A stretch of 61,763 bases of DNA, filler included, from Sluysia triapertura (taxonomy: Eukaryota), in the NCBI GenBank assembly GCA_046118255.1. It is 5 parts of 5 records of this genome, joined end to end, with 100 filler letters (N's around TTAATTAATTAA, not from the genome) between each part and the next. Parts side by side here need not be neighbours in the genome. Positions count along the whole stretch, not along the records: positions 1 to 13,506 come from JBJNIA010036149.1; 4 more parts are not named here. One strand, given 5' to 3'. Positions 1,223 through 12,163 of this stretch are shown one piece after another; the first letter of the stretch is position 1; each line of letters starts with the position of its first letter. Both the position numbers and the translations under genes were made by a program. The notes beneath the pieces were generated by a model that was not told the DNA's origin, did not search any database, and saw nothing but the letters and a program-made list of their open reading frames with translations.

Positions 1223-1819
1223 TATAAACAAAATAGTATTAACTAATAAGTCAGAATTTAGATTTGTACTTTTATTGTCTTATGTACACCATAGATAGAT
1301 TACAGCATGACTACTTTTATTTTTTACAAGATTTTAGGCTAAAACTTGCTGCCAGCAGTTTTACAAAAAAAACGAATTAATTATGCACTTACAAATTTAC
1401 GATGAAGTTTAAATTGTCCACAGATAAAATCAATTAATTATAGAACAGGTTCTACTTCTCTATTAAATCTACTAACGTTTTATTAGTATTGACATTAGAT
1501 TTTATATCACCACTATTAAATTGTACTTATTCCGATACTTTTGTTTCAATAAGATCATTATCAGGGCTTTTTAGTGTCACATTTAGAGATCCATTGGGAA
1601 AATATTTGCTGTAAAGTTCTTAAAATATTCAAACAAATGATGTATTGTGTAATATTGATCTTTTTTGATTTTATTTATTATAATTTTAAGATTAACTTTT
1701 TATTTCACAAATAATCTGCTTTCAGAATCATACAGTGCCCCTGCAGAACTTTATCCAATTATAATCCATGAATGATTTAAAAGATTTCATTATTTGTTAT
1801 GCTAGATTTTCTCTTATTC

Positions 1820-2760
1820 TTCTAACAATTACGATTTTAAATAAGGGTTCGTCTGCGGTATACGGTTTATTACGAAAATAACTACGAAAGGAATTTCCTT
1901 ACTCTTGCTAATGAAAGTCACTTAATAACGATTTGTAGAATTTCTTTAATTTTCTAAATTAAACAAATGATCTGTCCGCTTATCAAAATTTTAATTACTG
2001 TAATCTTACTAACAATTTTAATTCTAACTTCAAATAGGTCTATGATCGTAATCTTACCAACAATTTTAAATCTAAATATTCTTTAAGTCAATTTATGCTC
2101 AATTACGTTTATTAATATATTCGTGTAATTCAAAAATTATGAAACTCAAACAAATTTATCTTATTAAATAAACAATAATAATAACTAAGAAATGAATCGT
2201 AGGAAATTTATTCAAATAATAATTAACGAACAAAAGGTCAATAAAATTTATCAACGAACAATGGAACAATTATAATAATAATAGGTTAACAAAGAAAAAT
2301 AATCTTTTCTAATTGTAAATAAATAATTTTGGTTTATAGTTTAACCCAAGTTTAATACTTGGGTGTAAAAATTTAAATGATTTTGCGTAAGATTTTAAGG
2401 CTAAATGTATTAAAGCCGAACTTAACAAGAATTATCTTACTGAATTCTGATAAAATATTCTCCAAAAATTGATGCAATTAATATTGTCCAATTTTCTCAA
2501 AGTCGTCCAATTTTCCAAATCGATTCAACCAATGTTATCTATTTCTGAATTACTTCTAAAAGATCTAAGTCCAAGTAAATTCGTCTGACGAATAAAATGA
2601 TGAATATCTCGTTGACCAAATTTCAAAAAATCCGAATATCACGACGATAACACCTTCTTTTTAAAAAGTTTATAAAAATTCCTTCAATAACCTATGTGTT
2701 TCGTTTGCCAAACCTTCTAATATTTATACTTATTGATGATGGACCATAACATTTTTAATA
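1820..2760. repeat. Non-coding structured repeat family 1, copy A
   Basis: Shares ordered motifs with 3700-4450, 34600-35700 (inverted) and 41000-41830: AACAATTA..GGGTTCG, hairpin ACCCAAGT/ACTTGGGT at 2344-2364, GATTTTAA, and a minus-strand TATAAA near 2725. Confidence 0.7.
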
Positions 2761-3699
2761 TCTTAAAATATTTTTATTTATCAGAATTCAATAGTAGAAT
2801 TGTTTTTTAATGATTTTAATGATATTTTTATTATTTTTTCTTATCAATTAACTTTCGTATAATAATTTTAGAACACTAATATTAAATAATTTTTTAAATA
2901 CAATTTTTTCAAAGTTTTTAATACAAATTTTTCAAGAATTAAATGTTTAATATTTAATGTATCAAAATTAATATACAAAAATTTACAAAGATTTTAAATA
3001 TTTACATATAATTAGAATTTGCATTTATCCTGTAAATATTGAAAGTTTACTGAAATTGGAGAAAAATTTTTGAGAACCATTTTACGATTACTAGAGATAC
3101 ATTAAGTTATTCTTAATAATATTAAATCGAGATTTCAACAATTACAGAAAACAATGAAATTGGAAACCGATGGAAATTGCTATTGAAATTTAATTATTAA
3201 AATTGCTCGGCTTATGACCGAATAAAAAATGAAAATTTTTATGAGTAACTATTCCCATTTTTTCAATTTTAATATCCTAAACAATTACCCAATTGCTATA
3301 TTAACAATTGTATTTTTGTCAAAATAGAACAAGATAGCTGGACAAAAAAGAAAATTTTTTATATAAAACATTATCTCCATTACTTTCAGCAGCTGACTAA
3401 ACTTTATAAGCATTAGTTTTATTGTTAGGATTAGTAACTTACATTATTCCAATTTTATTAGTTTTAATAGTTATCGTGTTGTGTCACCCTTTGATTTTTA
3501 TAGATTTAGTACATAAGACAGTGATATATAATTGTTGAATTTATATATTGAAATTATATTTCTATAAAAGAGTAAAGGATAATTTATTGTGATAATTAAG
3601 CATATATTGAGATGTCGTATTAATTTAATTATTGAGTTATTTTTAAATAAGGACACATTTATATTTATCTCATTTTATTACTTGTTCAACTTTTTCTAA

Positions 3700-4450
3700 G
3701 ATTGTAACAATTATGATATTATCAATTTTCTGGGTCCGCCTGTGATATATGATCGATATCTCGCAGAAGACGTATTCACAGGATTTCAAATGTCAAGTTA
3801 ACTACGTGCAAAGTTTCTTAACCGTTTTGATGCAACTTAATCTAAAATACTTTGTAAATTAAATAATCGTTTAACGCAATTCTATGCAATTTAAAAATTT
3901 TAATCTTATATGACTGAGGTTAATTCTTTTATCTTTCAAAAATTCTTAACTAAAGATATAAAACTATAAAATGTATACAAATATTTATATATATAAATAA
4001 ATTGAGGATTCCTCAAACAAAAATTTCAGATTTTGAATTAGATTTTAACTCAGGTGAATTCTTGAGTATAATAAAAATGATTTTGAGTCGATTTTGATGC
4101 AAAAAACATTAATGTAAAACCTTAAAGAAAAATAGCATACTTATTCATGGGATTATGGAATGAAAATAGATTGAAATTACCCGATAGAATTATTTCTGCG
4201 AAAAGCCAAATACTGATCTAATACTCTTGTAGCAAACTGACGATTCGTCGAAAAAACTATTTCTTGGAATAATACGAATAATATCTTGACAAAAATTTGA
4301 ATATTAAAATTTCCTTTAAATAACTTGTAACGAATAATCATCCGGCATATATAAATGTCAAAAAGTTGTAAGTTTTAACTTTTGTTTCTGATTTATATAT
4401 GTACTCTGATTTACTTTACCGACTATTAATAAAATTGTTTATATTCTAAT
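3700..4450. repeat. Non-coding structured repeat family 1, copy B (~1.9 kb after copy A)
   Basis: AACAATTAT..GGGTCCG, hairpin 3739-3782, hairpin 4048-4067, minus-strand TATATAAA near 4395, and a TTTACCGACT motif shared with 41785. Confidence 0.7.
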
Positions 4451-4779
4451 TTTTAGCAATAAAATAATAAATTATTTCATAAAAACGGAATAAAATTCTT
4501 TCTTTATTAATTATTTTCTAAATTAATCATTTCATAATCTTTTTAAATTAAAAAATAATAACAGCCTTTTATTTTAACTATTCTTAAAAATTTTAACAAT
4601 TAATTTATTTACAAAAATAGTAACAAAAATTAACGTTATTTACAGAAAATGAATTAATTAATTTACAATAATAATAAAATTAACAAAATTAACGCTATTT
4701 ACAGTTTCAACGGTTAATTAATGAAAATGACAAATGATTAATAATATAAATTTACATATTTACATACTTGTATCCTTCT

Positions 4780-5620: not shown

Positions 5621-7684
5621 TGCTTTTGTTTTGTTTACTGATATTCCTCTTTAATAACTAAAAATAAAAAAAACTGAATCTCGATATATTCTTATATAAG
5701 AATTACACAAATCAAATCTTTTATACGACAAATATAATTCTATAAATCAAACTTTTTATATGGCTAATCAAATTCTTTAATAAATTATTGTCTAACTCTT
5801 TTTAAAAATCGCAGGGGTTACACAAAATAAAATGAAATATAAATAATAAAGACAAAATAAATCTTAACTCTATACTAACCACGTAAACTTATTTTGTTTT
5901 AATGTTATTGCTGAAGAAAAGATTCAATGAATGTTATCCACAACTCAATTGAATCCAGCGTCCCTATAGCAAGAAGTTCTTGACTAATTTGTCAATTGTT
6001 ACTGTTGTCGTTTTTTCTGGATTGTTCTTGTGATTTTATGTAAAAAGTTAGTTCTTTATATAATATCGAGATAATATCGATGCTATTTTCTTAGAGTCGG
6101 TTTTATGCCGACCCATTACTAAATGGAATTTCATTATTAATTTCCAATGAATGTCCGACTTTAGATTGCCTGACAATTATCTGAGATAATTAGTATTGTG
6201 AAGAACAAGCCCATATCTCTTTAAAATAATCAAATGATAATTTAATATCACAATTGGAATTATACAAACAGATATTAAAATACTTCATCCTAATTTACCC
6301 ATATTTATAATCCAATATAAAATTTCTTTTAATAACAATACTTTATATCATACGTAACACGGTTTAATTTTCAAAGAATGTTGCGATTAGAGAAAGTTGG
6401 ATTGTGAACCTCTAAAGTGAATAGGTAGTAAAAACGGAGTTAACAACACAATAATAATAACAATAATGTAAGAAATGATCCAGTATCAGTTCCATGCTGT
6501 GGTAACATTTTTTTAAATTGATTTTCTTTAAAATAATTAATTTAATTTAAATTATTTTACATATTTTTGGAAATACCAATTTTTTAATTAAAATGTTTAT
6601 TTATTTAATAATTTTTATATAGTTTTTAGGGAAGCTTTTATTTATTCCAAAAATTTTAAAATTACCTTTAGAAACTTTATCTCTATTAACTATTATTTGT
6701 TTAATTTTTTGAATTACTGGTAGTCGTTAATTATTTTGGTTAGTTTCAAATATTTGACTAGTATTGAAAATAACTTGTAATTTTGAAAAGTGATCAAGGC
6801 TCTTTATTTTAATTGTCTCATTGTAATCTTGTTATCTTTTCATTTTATTAAGTTTTAAATTTAATGTTAAATTGAAATAGGTTTGACATCAACATGAAAT
6901 CATTAAAGAAGTAATAAATTGATATAGTATCATTGTTAAAATAAAAACTAATTATGATAATTTGCATTCATTTTGTGCTTATTAAATTTATTGAGATTTC
7001 CAAGCTAAATTGATTTTGTTATTAAATTATTATTAATTCAATTAAATACTCAAAACTATGTTAATTACATTATTTGTTTTCGAAGCTTCCGTCTTTTCCG
7101 TTATGACTTCATTTCTTTTCTGATTTTGATATTTTCATACAAAGTTTGTGACAGCACCTTTCTTTCAGACTAATGTTTTTCAATCAGATAATATAATTTC
7201 TCTAATGCATCCGTTTTATTTCCTGACTTATAATTGATAACTTATTTCGTATAACCCAAATTGTTTTGGATTTCCCACAGAGTATTATCGGTTTTCATAA
7301 AGATTCTTTAACTTTAGAAACTCCATGCAAGATCGTCGTTCTATCTGAAGTTTCAGGTGCTCGTCGGCATTATCGACATTTTAAAGTAAAAAAATTTATT
7401 CTAAGATTGGGAAAGTTTAACCTTATAAATATACTTTATTTAAACGAATTTATAATTTTCAAAAATAAACGGAATAACTTTTCATTCATAATTCAAATAT
7501 TCTATTCAATCACTTAAAATATAAAAGCCATAGTCAAGAATCATGCATCATAATTTATACATATCAATATCTCTTCATATTAATTAAACCACAAAATTAT
7601 AAATTAATTTCGTCATAATTTTGCAATTTAATTCTTTAACATCATATTTACCTTACAGTTGCAAAACTTAAAATTACAAACAGC

Positions 7685-7736
<52 letters not shown>
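7685..7736. repeat. (AAT)n microsatellite
   Basis: Perfect trinucleotide run just upstream of the ATG at 7755. Confidence 0.95.
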
Positions 7737-7754: not shown

Positions 7755-8450
7755 ATGCCGAAAATATTTCAAAAACAAATTGCACCTACTACTTCAGTAA
7801 ATAATAGTAAAATGGTTATAGTAGCAAACACCAGTCATGGAACAAAATTTAAATCAAATGAAATACCTGGATTAAATGTTTTACGCTTAAATAATCATTT
7901 TAGTACTCCTGCTGGAATTGATCAAGCAAATATACACAAAAGAATTGCTTGTATTCATAGACCAATTGATGCTACTTTTTTAATAACAGGATTCTTAACA
8001 TTTGGATTAAAGACTTGGCAAGTTATAATTTGTACTAATGCTCCAAATAAAGTTGGAGGGTTTCTAGGTGGAATTGTATTATTAATATCTGGTTTAATTA
8101 ATTTTATCACAGTTGGTGCATTATCCTTAATGATTGTTTTGATCAGACTCTTTGCTTATGTTTCCATTCTTTTTGTGATGCTTTTACAAATAATATTAGA
8201 ATCAATTCATATAAGAAATATTCAATACAATTTATATGTTCAATATAAATCTAATTTAGATGAATGCAAAAATTATGCTTTGTTTTATATGAGTGTAACT
8301 ATTTTAATTGCTTGTCTATTCGCATTTCTTATGGCTATGGCCGGACTAATGCTAACGGTAGATGAATTAATTCTTACTTTAAAATATGATAACTACGTAG
8401 AATCTAGTCAAATTAATTTAGGTCGTGGTTTAGAACATCCGTTAATATAA
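7755..8450 (+). CDS. Intronless four-transmembrane protein, MS4A/CD20-like topology
   Basis: Open 231-aa ORF in very AT-rich DNA with four hydrophobic segments. GFLGGIVLLISGLI resembles the MS4A TM2 pattern. AATAAA lies ~40 nt after the stop. Family assignment is tentative. Confidence 0.7.
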   Translation: MPKIFQKQIAPTTSVNNSKMVIVANTSHGTKFKSNEIPGLNVLRLNNHFSTPAGIDQANIHKRIACIHRPIDATFLITGFLTFGLKTWQVIICTNAPNKVGGFLGGIVLLISGLINFITVGALSLMIVLIRLFAYVSILFVMLLQIILESIHIRNIQYNLYVQYKSNLDECKNYALFYMSVTILIACLFAFLMAMAGLMLTVDELILTLKYDNYVESSQINLGRGLEHPLI

Positions 8451-8727: not shown

Positions 8728-9056
8728 ATGCCTCCAAAGCGGAAAATCGCATCAAAATGTAAAGAAGTTGTCCCTCTTAAGAAGCCAAAGAGTGAATTTG
8801 AAAAAGTAAAAGCAGGTATATGAACTCTTTAATATCAATTATACGTTTAGTTTTGCAAAAGGGACCATCTTTTCGTAAAAAGGAACATATCATAGATAAA
8901 GAGGCTCAATCAATTTTTTCTGGTGGTTCTGTTGTTGAGGATTATGATTGTATGCTTAATCAAACAAATATTGACAAAAATAACAATAAATATTATGTGA
9001 TACAATTGATTAAACATGGTGGTAAATTTCATGTGTGGACTAGGTGGGGAAGAGTA
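8728..9056 (+). CDS. PARP3/PARP2-like poly(ADP-ribose) polymerase, 5' exons (WGR domain), partial
   Basis: Exon 1 8728-8815 (MPPKRK...), a 35-nt GT-AG intron 8816-8850, and exon 2 from 8851 in frame encoding YDCMLNQTNIDKNNNKYYVIQL...VWTRWGRV, the WGR signature. Probable donor at 9057. Later exons were not found. Confidence 0.85.
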
Positions 9057-10899
9057 GTTGGTTTATAAATAATAAAATTAAATTTTATAAATATATAATT
9101 AGTTTGTGTAGGGTATGTTTATGAATATTTTTCAGAATTTAGTTGAAATGAAATATGCATACTTCGAAATGTATACATAATACATTAATATTATTTTCAA
9201 AGGAAATTTCGAATCGAAGTTAATTTTTATTAAACCCATGTTCATTTTTGCTAGAAAATTCTATTTGTTTGGTGATCTCAATCCATATTTTCCCATCTAT
9301 TTTCTGTTATCCAATTTTTTAAGTTTTCTCTTAACTTTTACATTAATAGATATTTCAAATACAATTTCAAAATTTACAATCTTTTGTGGTCTGAATTTGT
9401 TGCTTTAATAAAAAATTTTATTTAATTTAAGAGTTTCTTCTAATTACTTTCAACGTCGTTTGATTAATGTAAAATGTTTCGAATCTTTATTAAAATTGGT
9501 TAACCAAAATGATGCATCCATTGTTTTATCAAACTCTTGATACTTAAACGTTTATACTGTTTAATTATTACAGTTAAGCTGATTGGTTTTCAGTATTGAT
9601 CTATTATGAAAACTATGTGCTTATAAATAAACCTGTAGAGCTTAAGGAAATTAAAACAATGCACGTATCAATATCCTTATTTATAATCTGAATAATTAAA
9701 ATCAGTTACTTAGATATTTAATCGAATTTTAATTTTCAACATACGCTAGATGAGGCATTGAAATTAATATTTTTCTTGATTATCAGCATTTATTATCTAT
9801 AACTCAAACTGACATTAAAATAAACAATTGTTTGCAGGCCTTTGAAAAATTCTTGGTGACAATTTTTGAAGAAAAATATCCAAAACTTTAAGTGTTCGTG
9901 GTTTATTTTGTAACTGATTTGAAGCAATATTGATCAAATATTTCTTTGTAAAATTACTTATGTTTTGAAATTGCATTTGGAAGGAAAATAGTTTTTATTT
10001 AGACAATATAAAAATAAAAGAAAATCTTAAAAAATAGATGTATCAACAAATTTATTTCAAATTATGAATCTGATAAAGCAAAAAATCAGTTTTTTGCGTG
10101 AAGAACAAGCTTTAATAAAATTCTAAAATGAAAAACAAAAATGAAATGAACTGACAATCTGACAAGTAGAGTTTCAATATATGAATATCGTGAAACCTAG
10201 AAGATACAACAGTGCAGATAAAAATGGATCATTTTGAATAGTATTTATTTTATTATATTTTTCAGATAAATTTTGAGTTAATTTTTTGTTATTTCTGTTG
10301 AAATTTATTATCTTAGAATGATAAATTATTTATTCATTCGGAAGTAAATGTAATGTTGTCTTAACTGCGAAGTTTTTTAATTTTATATATTTACTACAAT
10401 GAACTTTTCATAATGTATATATGCAGATGTAATTTTCATTAAACTTCACGAATAAGGTTAAATATTTATTAAATATTATTAGGTTCACTTTTACATTTCA
10501 AAAATAATTGTTAACAAAATTCTAATTACTTTTCCAAGTAAAATAAACAACGTATTAGGTTTTTTGACAAAACAATATCAAACAATTAAACATTATCACC
10601 AAGTATTTACCTTTGCAGTAATTGATTATTTTATTTAAAGATACTTCTAAGCAATTCACTATTAATTTTAAGCACATATTGTGTTTGAATTGTATTATTG
10701 GAAAGATATACGTTAGAGTATTGTCTTAATCAGACGGAATTATAAAATAATTTATTACTAGATGTCGAAAAAAAGTACCACATACTGTTCAATATTATGG
10801 TGAATCTTTATATTTATATATGTTCTTATTAATTTAATTTAATATTAATTTAATTTCGAATGATGTATTTTAATATTAAAATAATTATTAATTTATCTA

Positions 10900-11250: not shown

Positions 11251-11612
11251 TATTTCAATTTATTATTGCAAGATTTTGTTCGAGTTACTTATTACATTAC
11301 TTTATTCTGTGTTGCGAAGGTGTTAAAAGTTTATGCAATATTAAATTGAATGATGTGACAGTTTGATTTTTTAAATATTTCTTTAATAATTAACTTTTAA
11401 TTAAATTTTCTACATCAGTGCCTTCTTTGTTTTTTATATTTCGATTTTTAAATGATATTACGTCATTTATTATGATAATTATACTGATAAATAATTATAA
11501 TTATTATTGCTATTATTATATTATTTTATTATTACTCATTGTTATATTATATTATATATTATTATTAATCATTTATTTTGATAATTAAACTGATAAATAA
11601 TTATTATTGTTA

Positions 11613-11679
11613 TTGTTAGACTTCTCAAAATGGACTGACCGGGAATCGAACCCGGGACCTCTGTCTGAGCAGTTAGATG
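11613..11679 (-). mobile_element. 3' part of a tRNA-derived element (SINE-like or tRNA pseudogene)
   Basis: Minus strand reads CATCTAACTGCTCAGACAGAGGTCCCGGGTTCGATTCCCGGTCAGTCCATTTT: T-arm/B-box, 3' acceptor strand and T4 terminator. The tail AGTCTAACA is shared with the copy at 44094. Confidence 0.8.
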
Positions 11680-12142
11680 ATTAAAAACATGTATTAATAT
11701 AATAGTTTTAGTCTCTTTCTCTTTTTTTAGAGAAGGAAGGTAATCTTTCTTCTATTCAGGGACCTTGTAGAACATGGTCGCGATATGCGTTATTCGAGGA
11801 CTCCGCAGCTAGTCGTACCAGGGTCTTGGTTTCGGTCTTGTGGAAGCCAAGTGCCTTGAGAAGCTTGTCATTCTCGGGATCCCACGAGCTCAAGGCTCCA
11901 ACGACGAATGTATCCAGAGACACCTTGCACATCAGTTGTTCCTGCAGTTTGCCCTGGAGATCAGAATACTTCGCTATATTGGTGGTTCGGGCTATTTCGA
12001 AATTTTTCTTCAGGTTCATGGGAGTTTTGACATCAATCAAGAACAGTTGCGATGAGGAAGTACCGCGGGACTGTATGTCAGCTCGTCGAGTCTCACCGAT
12101 AATTGGTGTAGGCGAATCCTTGATGACTTACAATCCCTTCTG
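11680..12142 (-). mobile_element. 5'-truncated R2-group (NeSL/R4/Utopia-like) non-LTR retrotransposon: REL endonuclease end plus 3' UTR
   Basis: GC-rich island encoding RRADI...LIDVKTP...AR...KYSDL...FVVGALSSWDPENDKLLKALG, the restriction-like endonuclease C-terminal pattern. Confidence 0.85.
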
Positions 12143-12163
12143 GGCTATCAGACCCGTCTAACA
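12143..12163 (-). mobile_element. 5' part of the same tRNA-derived element
   Basis: Minus strand TGTTAGACGGGTCTGATAGCCCAG aligns with the 5' end of the intact copy (TGTAGTCGCGGCTGATAGCTCTG, 44086). GGTCTGA pairs with TCAGTCC of the 3' part. Confidence 0.6.

What the first reader, a model, noticed from the sequence alone, without database searches (positions are those of the whole stretch)
3700..4450. Family 1: diverged non-coding element with two strand-specific, covarying hairpins
Seen: four copies (1820, 3700, 34600 inverted, 41000) on three contigs have low overall similarity but keep hairpin H1: ACCCAAGT/ACTTGGGT (2344), ACTCAGG/CTTGAGT (4048), ACCCAGAG/CTTTGGGT (35187 minus), ACCTAGGC/GCTTGGGT (41385). 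Hairpin H2 is CCTGTGA-t-ATATG/CGTAT-TCACAGG (3739-3782) versus CCTACG-t-TAAACG/CGTTTA-CGTAGG (35643-35599), both 12-bp stems with a bulged U. All non-Watson-Crick pairs are G-U on the same element strand, which is antisense to the TATA-like box. Inference: selection on an RNA or ssDNA structure in an unclassified element, such as an LTR/pseudo-LTR, a retrozyme-like unit or an ncRNA gene.
Basis: partly seen in the sequence, partly recalled or inferred. Interest (0 to 1): 0.8.

Follow-up and report, generated by a model that had tools for sequence, protein, structure and literature searches.

The report
Decayed solo LTR with conserved hairpins
The flagged stretch is the inner part of a dead, single long terminal repeat (LTR) of a tRNA-Lys-primed retrotransposon; its hairpins are real, conserved signals of the retrotransposon lineage, not a host RNA gene.

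Summary
Window 3700-4450 lies inside a 1082-bp interspersed repeat (3683-4764), 5'-TG...CA-3', flanked by a 4-bp duplication (TACT). A diverged relative lies at 1800-3006. Fifteen copies from three families have their own 4-bp duplications and unique flanks, so these are solo LTRs.

The hairpins are real. H2 (3739-3782) is a 7+5-bp stem with one bulge. It belongs to a terminal module found 881 times (0 in the control), with many compensatory stem variants. H1 and a newly found H3 show three compensatory pairs between the two window families.

Within a family, mutations break the stems symmetrically. Selection therefore acted on the active element, not on these copies.

In full-length relatives the H2-proximal LTR end is followed by 5-6 nt and a primer-binding site. 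That site is complementary over 16 nt to this genome's own tRNA-Lys. The other LTR end abuts a polypurine tract (240 junctions).

H2 then sits at the R/U5 border, about 60-105 nt upstream of the primer-binding site. A second covarying stem, like the retroviral U5-IR stem, spans the LTR terminus.

There is no Rfam or hammerhead match. This is a known kind of feature and of modest interest.

The parts
3683..4764 (-). Solo LTR, family B (subfamily with the end TGTTCAAC...). Read on the element's sense (minus) strand: U3 starts at 4764 and U5 ends at 3683.
   Evidence: Homology to other copies stops at 3676-3685 and 4764-4769. Termini are TG...CA. There are at least 1434 first-look candidates in the genome. 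Full-length relatives of this subfamily carry ...GTTGAACA + ATTATT + TGGCGCCCGAA.
3679..3682 (.). Target-site duplication TACT, left copy.
   Evidence: Read from the sequence. Seven family-B copies have their own 4-bp duplications.
4765..4768 (.). Target-site duplication TACT, right copy.
3739..3782 (-). Hairpin H2: 7 bp, one bulged base, 5 bp, 19-nt loop. Lies at the R/U5 border of the element's RNA. This copy has one private T.G pair.
3731..3738 (-). Near-invariant motif TGGGTCCG (CGGACCCA on the sense strand) next to H2. Candidate poly(A) cleavage site (CA) or contact with the tRNA primer.
   Evidence: Used as the anchor (881 hits, 0 in the control). Conserved in families A, B and C. The function is inferred.
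3683..3689 (-). LTR terminus TGTTCAA: the part of the 3' arm (sense strand) of the U5-IR-like stem that lies inside the LTR.
   Evidence: It pairs with 3702-3709. CAA/TTG here against CAG/CTG in the main B family is a compensatory change.
3702..3714 (-). TTGtAACAATTAT: the 5' arm (sense strand) of the U5-IR-like stem. ATTAT would pair with the spacer that follows the LTR in full-length copies.
4048..4067 (.). Hairpin H1: ACTCAGG / CTTGAGT, 7 bp with a G.T on the + strand.
4098..4116 (.). Hairpin H3 (newly found): TGCA ... TGTA, 4 bp.
   Evidence: Two compensatory pairs against family A (GGCT/AGCC).
1800..3006 (-). Solo LTR, family A (TGCTAGA...ATATTTACA). This copy has no clean target-site duplication (GTTA / TATA).
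   Evidence: Six other A copies have 4-bp duplications.
1852..1864 (-). What remains of family A's H2 (one arm only). The partner arm was lost in a 20-bp deletion between 1873 and 1874.
2344..2364 (.). H1 in the family-A copy: ACCCAAGT / ACTTGGGT.
2399..2417 (.). H3 in the family-A copy: GGCT ... AGCC.

Best explanation
Window 3683-4764 is a decayed solo LTR, and 1800-3006 is a second one from a related family. Both belong to a large group of LTR retrotransposons primed by tRNA-Lys. The element's RNA is read from the window's minus strand, so the end near 3683 is the 3' end of U5.

The last ~130 nt before that end form a module shared by many otherwise dissimilar LTR families. In RNA order the module contains:
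- hairpin H2 (7 bp, one bulged base, 5 bp), whose loop in most lineages ends in a poly(A)-signal-like (A/G/U)AUAAA;
- the near-invariant motif CGGACCCA, 20-22 nt after that hexamer;
- about 50 nt of U5;
- a second stem whose 3' arm runs across the LTR end into the 5-6-nt spacer before the primer-binding site, as the retroviral U5-IR stem does.

Shown: the LTR identity, the orientation, the conservation and covariation of H2 and of the terminal stem, and the neutral decay of individual copies.

Inferred: H2 acts in the genomic RNA at the R/U5 border. It most likely presents or masks the poly(A) signal, so that the signal is used in the 3' copy of the LTR and ignored in the 5' copy. It may also help first-strand transfer or primer placement. 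The terminal stem most likely helps initiation of reverse transcription at the tRNA-Lys primer.

[quoted passage not shown] Whether they act as RNA or as DNA is unresolved. The copy in the window is a fossil with no sign of a function of its own.
For: Solo LTR: TG...CA ends, 4-bp duplications in 15 copies of three families, and unique flanks. All 100 listed flanks of the ~1900 family-C starts are different.

Orientation:
- TGGCGCCCGAA occurs 1455 times (472 in the control). It is preceded by ends typical of these LTR families (...GCTGAACA...GTTGAACA...CCGAACA...CTAGCA) plus a 5-6-nt spacer.
- The same junction read from the LTR side is CCCAATTCGGGCGCCAAATAAT|TGTTCAGC.
- It matches over 16 nt the 3' end of a tRNA-Lys-like gene of this genome...GTCCCAATTCGGGCG.
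- The other LTR end is followed by CTTCCC-loop-GGGAAG in 240 junctions (0 in the control). On the minus strand this reads as a purine tract abutting TG.
- Lineage-level non-Watson-Crick pairs in H2 are A.C on the + strand, which is G.U on the minus strand, in at least 5 independent lineages against none of the opposite kind.
- RNAalifold finds the H2 helix only on the minus strand.
- The longest open frames in internal fragments lie on the minus-sense strand.

Structures: H2 statistics. The module occurs 881 times against 0 in the control, with stem variants such as CCTGTGA.ATACG, CCTACG.TAAACG and CCTATAA.CTAAG, each with a matching partner arm. The terminal stem is CAG/CTG in B, CAA/TTG in the window subfamily, AGA/TCT in A and CG/CG in C.
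Against: No transcript data are available, so the transcription start, the poly(A) site and the R boundaries are not mapped. The main B family, including this copy, has TATCAA instead of a (A/G/U)AUAAA hexamer, so the poly(A) reading does not fit every lineage. H1's conserved G.T pair is on the + strand and becomes an A.C mismatch in the sense RNA. No gag or pol domain was found in the three short internal fragments held, so the superfamily is not determined. The five-to-zero strand asymmetry is a small sample, read by eye from 100 of 881 listed matches.
Confidence: 0.82

Rival explanations
1. The inverted repeats act as double-stranded DNA, for example as palindromic binding sites for dimeric transcription factors or for integrase. 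On this view they are not RNA structures.
For: [quoted passage not shown] RNAalifold predicts nothing for that block on either strand.
Against: The sequence of H2's stem changes almost completely between families, while pairing, the bulge position and the 7+5 geometry are kept. A protein site would keep sequence, not complementarity. The lineage-level mismatches are strand-specific wobbles.
Confidence: 0.1
2. One reading: the structures form on the + strand, as RNA antisense to the element or as first-strand cDNA.
For: H1 has a conserved G.T on the + strand in 41 of 47 copies. It folds to -8.2 kcal/mol on the + strand against -3.3 on the minus strand.
Against: For H2 the propagated non-Watson-Crick pairs are mismatches on the + strand. 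The window's T.G pair is private to this copy. The element's sense strand is the minus strand.
Confidence: 0.06
3. The unit is a free-standing non-coding RNA gene or a retrozyme-like, self-cleaving unit.
For: Conserved, covarying hairpins in a non-coding repeat.
Against: No Rfam family at E<=1 in the window or in seven intact relatives, and no hammerhead. The unit has TG...CA ends, 4-bp duplications, and a primer-binding site and polypurine tract in full-length relatives. Stems decay neutrally within families.
Confidence: 0.02
4. The hairpins arise by chance in AT-rich repeat DNA.
For: The fold of H2 in the single window copy is no better than shuffled sequence (z = -0.95).
Against: 0 of 500 shuffles reach the observed covariation. 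The pattern controls give 0 hits against 162, 881 and 240.
Confidence: 0.01

Closest known systems
Solo LTRs of Ty3/gypsy- or BEL/Pao-type LTR retrotransposons and insect errantiviruses
   Same: TGT...ACA short inverted ends, a 4-bp target duplication, a size of about 0.8-1.4 kb, thousands of copies, and mostly solo LTRs. Full-length relatives have a tRNA-Lys primer-binding site and a polypurine tract. The best-conserved part lies near the poly(A) signal and U5, as described for animal Metaviridae LTRs (PMC3601003).
   Different: The superfamily is not established, because no gag or pol sequence linked to these LTRs could be read. The 5-6-nt spacer before the primer-binding site is longer than usual.
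Retroviral U5-IR stem-loop, and the similar stem required by the self-primed retrotransposon Tf1
   Same: A stem made from U5 sequence directly upstream of the primer-binding site, kept by compensatory changes. PMC3601003 cites the U5-IR loop at the 5' end of retroviral genomes as a general feature.
   Different: Here the 3' arm crosses the LTR boundary into the spacer. The role in initiation is inferred, not tested. Priming is by tRNA-Lys, not self-priming.
Lentiviral poly(A) hairpin at the R/U5 border (HIV-1), cited from general knowledge
   Same: A conserved stem-loop about 60-105 nt upstream of a tRNA-Lys primer-binding site. In most lineages it carries a poly(A)-like hexamer, with a conserved CA about 20 nt downstream.
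   Different: There is no sequence similarity. The hexamer sits in the loop and is often a weak variant (GAUAAA, UAUAAA), and it is absent in the main B family. The poly(A) site is not mapped.
Hairpins containing the polypurine tract in Sirevirus and HIV (PMC3601003)
   Same: The polypurine tract next to the 3' LTR lies in a hairpin with an invariant stem (CTTCCC/GGGAAG) and a variable loop.
   Different: Here the purine tract is in the stem and both arms lie outside the LTR. In Sirevirus one arm lies in U3 and the tract is in the loop.
Retrozymes, TRIMs and LARDs (non-autonomous LTR elements)
   Same: Non-coding units with 4-bp duplications. The internal fragments that could be read have no recognisable domains.
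   Different: There is no hammerhead ribozyme. The 1.1-kb unit is a single LTR, not a pair of short repeats around a core.

Membership tests
LTR of an LTR retrotransposon (solo LTR) | Ends 5'-TG...CA-3' forming short inverted repeats | tested here: met
   TGTTCAAC...ATATTTACA in the window. The same type of ends is seen in families A, B and C.
LTR of an LTR retrotransposon (solo LTR) | Target-site duplication of fixed length, 4-6 bp | tested here: met
   4 bp in 15 copies. B: TACT, TTTT, ATTT, AAAC, TTCT, TTAC, ATAT. A: TTAA, TAAT, GATT, GAAA, CATT, CAAT. C: CAAA, GATT.
LTR of an LTR retrotransposon (solo LTR) | In full-length copies, a primer-binding site complementary to a host tRNA 3' end just inside one LTR | tested here: met
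   TGGCGCCCGAATTGGG lies 5-6 nt after ...GAACA or ...AGCA. It matches 16 nt of this genome's tRNA-Lys-like gene 3' end plus CCA.
LTR of an LTR retrotransposon (solo LTR) | A polypurine tract just inside the other LTR | tested here: met
   GGGGAAG(TAA) abuts TG on the minus strand in 240 junctions, 0 in the control.
LTR of an LTR retrotransposon (solo LTR) | Two LTRs in the same orientation around an internal region that codes for gag and pol | tested here: inconclusive
   Contig C14633 has an LTR/polypurine junction at 1334-1368 and an A-type LTR at 6053-7263. The 1.5 kb of internal sequence held (L040) has no Pfam domain.
Ty3/gypsy (Metaviridae) specifically | Pol domain order PR-RT-RH-IN and RT phylogeny | not testable with these tools
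   No pol sequence linked to these LTRs could be fetched. The 4-bp duplication and the tRNA-Lys primer are only suggestive.
Retrozyme or hammerhead-bearing repeat | Hammerhead ribozyme motif in the repeat | tested here: not met
   No Rfam hit at E<=1 in the window. In seven relatives the only hit is a sub-threshold S15 leader match that lies elsewhere.
MITE or DNA transposon | Terminal inverted repeats longer than a few bases | tested here: not met
   Only TGT/ACA is shared between the two ends.
U5-IR-type stem next to the primer-binding site | A stem from U5 sequence abutting the primer-binding site, kept by compensatory change | tested here: met
   ATAATTGTT(a)CAG pairs with CTGAACA|ATTAT. 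The inner pairs are CAG/CTG, CAA/TTG, AGA/TCT and CG/CG in different families.
U5-IR-type stem next to the primer-binding site | Required for initiation of reverse transcription | not testable with these tools
   This needs an experiment.
Poly(A) hairpin at the R/U5 border | Poly(A) hexamer within the hairpin and a cleavage site 10-30 nt downstream | tested here: inconclusive
   AAUAAA in family A, GAUAAA or UAUAAA in most C and some B lineages, GGUAAA or UAUCAA in others. A conserved CA lies 20-22 nt downstream. No 3'-end data are available.

The most novel reading that the evidence does not exclude
H2 together with the invariant CGGACCCA could be a previously undescribed cis-acting RNA module, shared by a whole clade of invertebrate tRNA-Lys-primed LTR retrotransposons, that does two jobs at once. 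The first job would be that of a poly(A)-signal hairpin deciding between 5' and 3' LTR use. The second would be a second contact with the tRNA-Lys primer: GGACCC can pair with GGGUCU in the variable/T-arm region of this genome's tRNA-Lys, much like the primer activation signal of HIV-1. The excess of A-to-G changes on the sense strand of the stem could also be a fossil trace of ADAR editing of the genomic RNA.
Probability: 0.2. Interest if true: 0.55.

Novelty: new member of a known kind. Interest (0 to 1): 0.3.

Why it matters
The result turns an apparently mysterious 'structured non-coding element' into an ordinary annotation: two solo LTRs. It also shows that the LTR group makes up thousands of copies of this genome.

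For transposon biology it gives a clean comparative example. Hundreds of copies and many stem variants show RNA structures at the R/U5/primer-binding-site junction of an invertebrate LTR retrotransposon group. These structures parallel the retroviral U5-IR stem and the lentiviral poly(A) hairpin.

For genome scanning it is a caution. Covariation between repeat families reflects selection on the mobile element, not a function of the copy at hand.

Tried and rejected
- Rfam scans at E<=1 of the window and of seven intact relatives gave nothing relevant.
- First searches for a primer-binding site as 'LTR end + 0-4 nt + TGG' failed or hit unrelated repeats, because the real spacer is 5-6 nt and I first looked at the wrong end.
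- A purine run directly before TGTTCAGC gave no hit.
- A recurrent flank, TGGAGTGTTGACAATC, was first taken for a primer-binding site. It is now regarded as leader or other repeat sequence and remains unexplained.
- Recurrent flanks TATCACGTAACCATCTGAAACT and GGAGTGAGGTTCGAGAAA before some TGTTCAGC starts, and a TTTTCGTGTTATATATTAT-type repeat before some family-A starts, are unexplained. They may be nested insertions.
- Comparing all flanks of 57 loci with each other found no shared internal region.
- The gypsy-like protease and RT fragments next to LTRs in L005, L086 and L004 belong to other elements into which these LTRs inserted. L005 has its own duplication, AAAC.
- A scan of metagenome contigs for the module found nothing.
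- Looking up a histone H2A to identify the organism found nothing.
- Counts of AATAAA and TATAAA motifs cannot give the orientation in this AT-rich DNA.
- RNAalifold run through the tool on the + strand predicted no structure.
Motifs are quoted as the tools printed them.

Full report
WHAT IS THERE

The window is very AT-rich (about 16-37% G+C per 500 nt). It comes from a 619-Mb eukaryotic assembly of 263,945 contigs. I could not identify the organism.

A search of that genome with 3660-4480 returned dozens of copies and 1434 first-look candidates. Extending the query showed that homology runs from about 3683 to 4764, so the flagged 3700-4450 is only the inner part of a 1082-bp repeat.

The repeat begins TGTTCAAC and ends ATATTTACA. 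It is flanked by the direct duplication TACT at 3679-3682 and 4765-4768. Six other family-B copies with both ends present have their own 4-bp duplications and unrelated flanks.

It runs from 1800 to 3006, TGCTAGA...ATATTTACA. The genome holds 877 first-look candidates for it, and six of its copies have 4-bp duplications.

Its LTRs are 797 and 1421 bp long and again have 4-bp duplications.

There are no long terminal inverted repeats, no tRNA-like or hammerhead motif, and no Rfam hit. TG...CA ends, a fixed 4-bp duplication and unique flanks are the signature of solo LTRs.

ARE THE HAIRPINS REAL?

Yes, on comparative evidence.

H2 follows a near-invariant GGGTCCG. In families A, B and C it is a 7-bp stem, one bulged base, a 5-bp stem and a 16-21-nt loop.

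On 43 copies, 90% of cells pair and five pairs changed on both sides. The covariation score is 0.315 against 0.167+-0.012 in shuffles (0/500). Sliding the partner arm drops pairing to 45% or less.

A pattern that fixes only the flanks (AACAATTAT, GGGTCCG and the closing GG) finds 881 sites against 0 in the control. The listed matches show at least eight stem versions, each with a matching partner arm. Examples are CCTGTGA.ATACG, CCTACG.TAAACG, CCTACG.CAAACG, CCTACG.CAATCG, CCTATAA.CTAAG and CCTGTG.AACAC.

H1, together with a hairpin I call H3, lies in a ~100-nt block shared by A and B. Between the two families all six base differences in the eleven pairs fall as three compensatory doubles.

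By energy alone, H2 of this copy is unremarkable (z = -0.95). H1 is modestly better than shuffles (z = -2.7).

THE COPIES THEMSELVES ARE DECAYING

Within families A and B, private changes in H2 break or weaken pairs without strand preference. There are 23 changes that give G.T against 21 that give A.C.

The window's own T.G pair is such a private change, a CpG turned into TpG. The window's A copy has lost one arm of H2 through a 20-bp deletion.

Selection therefore acted on the replicating element lineages, not on the inserted copies. This rules out a host ncRNA gene.

WHICH STRAND?

Early attempts to find a primer-binding site failed. Three later searches settled the question.

(i) The sequence CTTCCCCGTTAGGGAAGAT occurs 240 times (0 in the control). 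Every listed case directly follows an LTR end ...ATTTACA plus 2-5 nt. On the minus strand this reads CTTCCC-loop-GGGGAAG-TAA|TGTAAAT, a purine tract abutting the start of an LTR.

(ii) Listing what precedes TGTTCAGC showed a recurrent CCCAATTCGGGCGCCAAATAAT. Searching TGGCGCCCGAA gave 1455 hits against 472 in the control. Row after row is preceded by the reverse complements of these LTR starts plus a 5-6-nt spacer. These are ...GCTGAACA and ...GTTGAACA (family B; the latter is the window's own subfamily)...CCGAACA (family C) and ...CTAGCA (A-like).

(iii) The genome's own tRNA-Lys-like gene ends ...GTCCCAATTCGGGCG. The site TGGCGCCCGAATTGGG is therefore complementary to 16 nt of the mature tRNA 3' end.

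A polypurine tract on one side and a tRNA-Lys primer-binding site on the other fix the element's sense strand as the window's minus strand.

Three weaker observations agree:
- The non-Watson-Crick pairs that spread with whole lineages of H2 are all A.C on the + strand, that is G.U on the minus strand. They are four different T-to-C changes in the C and B groups and the C.A of family A, with none of the opposite kind.
- RNAalifold recovers the helix only on the minus strand.
- Open frames in three internal fragments are longer on that strand.

ANATOMY OF THE CONSERVED MODULE (RNA ORDER)

The C-group LTRs share only their last ~110-135 nt with each other and with B. This fits the published observation that animal Metaviridae and retroviral LTRs are best conserved around the poly(A) signal, the region downstream of it and the terminal integrase sites, while U3 is variable (PMC3601003).

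In RNA order the module is as follows:
- H2. Its loop ends, in most lineages, in AAUAAA (family A), GAUAAA or UAUAAA (most C and some B lineages), and less often GGUAAA. The main B family has UAUCAA.
- CGGACCCA, whose final CA lies 20-22 nt after the hexamer.
- About 50 nt of U-rich U5.
- A stem ATAATTGTT(a)CAG ... CTGAACA|ATTAT, whose 3' arm crosses the LTR end into the spacer, one base before the primer-binding site.

The inner pairs of this terminal stem differ between families in a compensatory way. They are CAG/CTG in B, CAA/TTG in the window's subfamily, AGA/TCT in A and CG/CG in C. Family A's AGCA end pairs with UGUU through a G.U that exists only on the minus strand.

MECHANISM: WHAT IS SHOWN AND WHAT IS INFERRED

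Shown: the features are LTRs; the orientation is as stated; two stems near the U5 end are kept by compensatory change.

Inferred:
- The terminal stem is the counterpart of the retroviral U5-IR stem and helps tRNA-Lys-primed initiation of reverse transcription.
- H2 is an R/U5-border stem-loop, most likely a poly(A)-signal hairpin. It may also have a role in strand transfer or primer contact. I put about 50% on the poly(A) reading.

H1 and H3 remain unassigned. Their covariation is real, but it amounts to one split between two families. RNAalifold predicts nothing for them on either strand. H1's G.T is on the antisense strand, so a DNA-level palindrome in U3 or an antisense transcript are both open.

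COMPARISON AND NOVELTY

The feature is a member of a known kind: solo LTRs of a tRNA-Lys-primed LTR retrotransposon group, with R/U5 RNA structures like those of retroviruses. The superfamily (Ty3/gypsy or BEL/Pao) could not be tested, because no linked pol sequence could be read.

Retrozyme, MITE and ncRNA-gene memberships fail on their defining features.

The specific bulged 7+5 hairpin and its breadth (about 900 or more copies) are, as far as I can tell, undescribed. I could not check any transposon library, so this particular family may already be catalogued.

LIMITS

- Everything is in silico.
- The strand-asymmetry count was read by eye from 100 of 881 listed matches.
- Only a sample of copies was read, biased towards well-assembled, old solo LTRs.
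- The organism was not identified.

Noticed in passing
genome-wide; L024:2137-2165; L012:1370-1394: The polypurine tract next to the 3' LTR sits in a small hairpin with an invariant 6-bp stem (CTTCCC/GGGAAG). The 5-nt loop varies between lineages (CGTTA, CATTA, CGTCA, CGTTC, CCTTA on the + strand). There are 240 junctions and 0 in the control.
   Followed up: partly
window 4002-4016: A perfect palindrome, TTGAGGA-t-TCCTCAA, inside LTR B. Some relatives (for example L017) have TTGAGGA-ttac-TCCTCAA, and others have only AGGA/TCCT.
   Followed up: no
window 8820-9065 (+): An open frame with a WGR domain (Pfam E = 9e-12), probably an exon of a PARP-like gene. If the two LTRs lie in an intron of that gene, they are antisense to it.
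   Followed up: partly
window 7755-8450 (+): A 231-aa ATG-started open frame with several hydrophobic stretches and no Pfam match.
   Followed up: partly
window 11500-12160: A G+C-richer island (37%) with overlapping open frames on both strands (94 aa on the minus strand, 111 aa on the plus strand). The minus-strand frame has no Pfam match. It may be a remnant of another mobile element.
   Followed up: partly
window 7686-7735: An (AAT)n microsatellite of about 50 nt.
   Followed up: no
L005:100-1500, L086:469-849, L004:539-1004: Fragments of a gypsy-like protease and reverse transcriptase (RVT_1, E = 9e-11 in L005) lie next to three of the LTR copies. In L005 the LTR has its own duplication, so it is nested in an older pol gene. 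The same pol family recurs as a neighbour.
   Followed up: partly
genome-wide: Several other flanks recur beside LTR starts: TATCACGTAACCATCTGAAACT (about 12 of 100 rows), GGAGTGAGGTTCGAGAAA (6 rows), a TTTTCGTGTTATATATTAT-type repeat before family-A starts, and TGGAGTGTTGACAATC after family-C ends. Their nature is unexplained. They could be nested insertions, preferred targets or leader variants.
   Followed up: partly
G000:C14367:1126-1159 (-): The 3' half of a tRNA-Lys-like gene (...GAGGGTCTTGGATTCGAGTCCCAATTCGGGCG). Its GGGTCT could pair with the LTR's invariant GGACCC.
   Followed up: no
L024:38-445 (+): An intact-looking 135-aa histone H2A gene (Pfam Histone and Histone_H2A_C) about 1 kb from an LTR B fragment. 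The exact protein is not on record in the public collection.
   Followed up: partly
L024:2684-3371: A tandem array of ~110-nt units (74-83% identical) inside the putative internal region next to the polypurine tract.
   Followed up: no
family B copies, around window 3949-3951: Several copies (C19790, C15854, C203540, C233999) carry about 66-77 extra bases at this point compared with the window copy. This is an indel polymorphism of the LTR.
   Followed up: no
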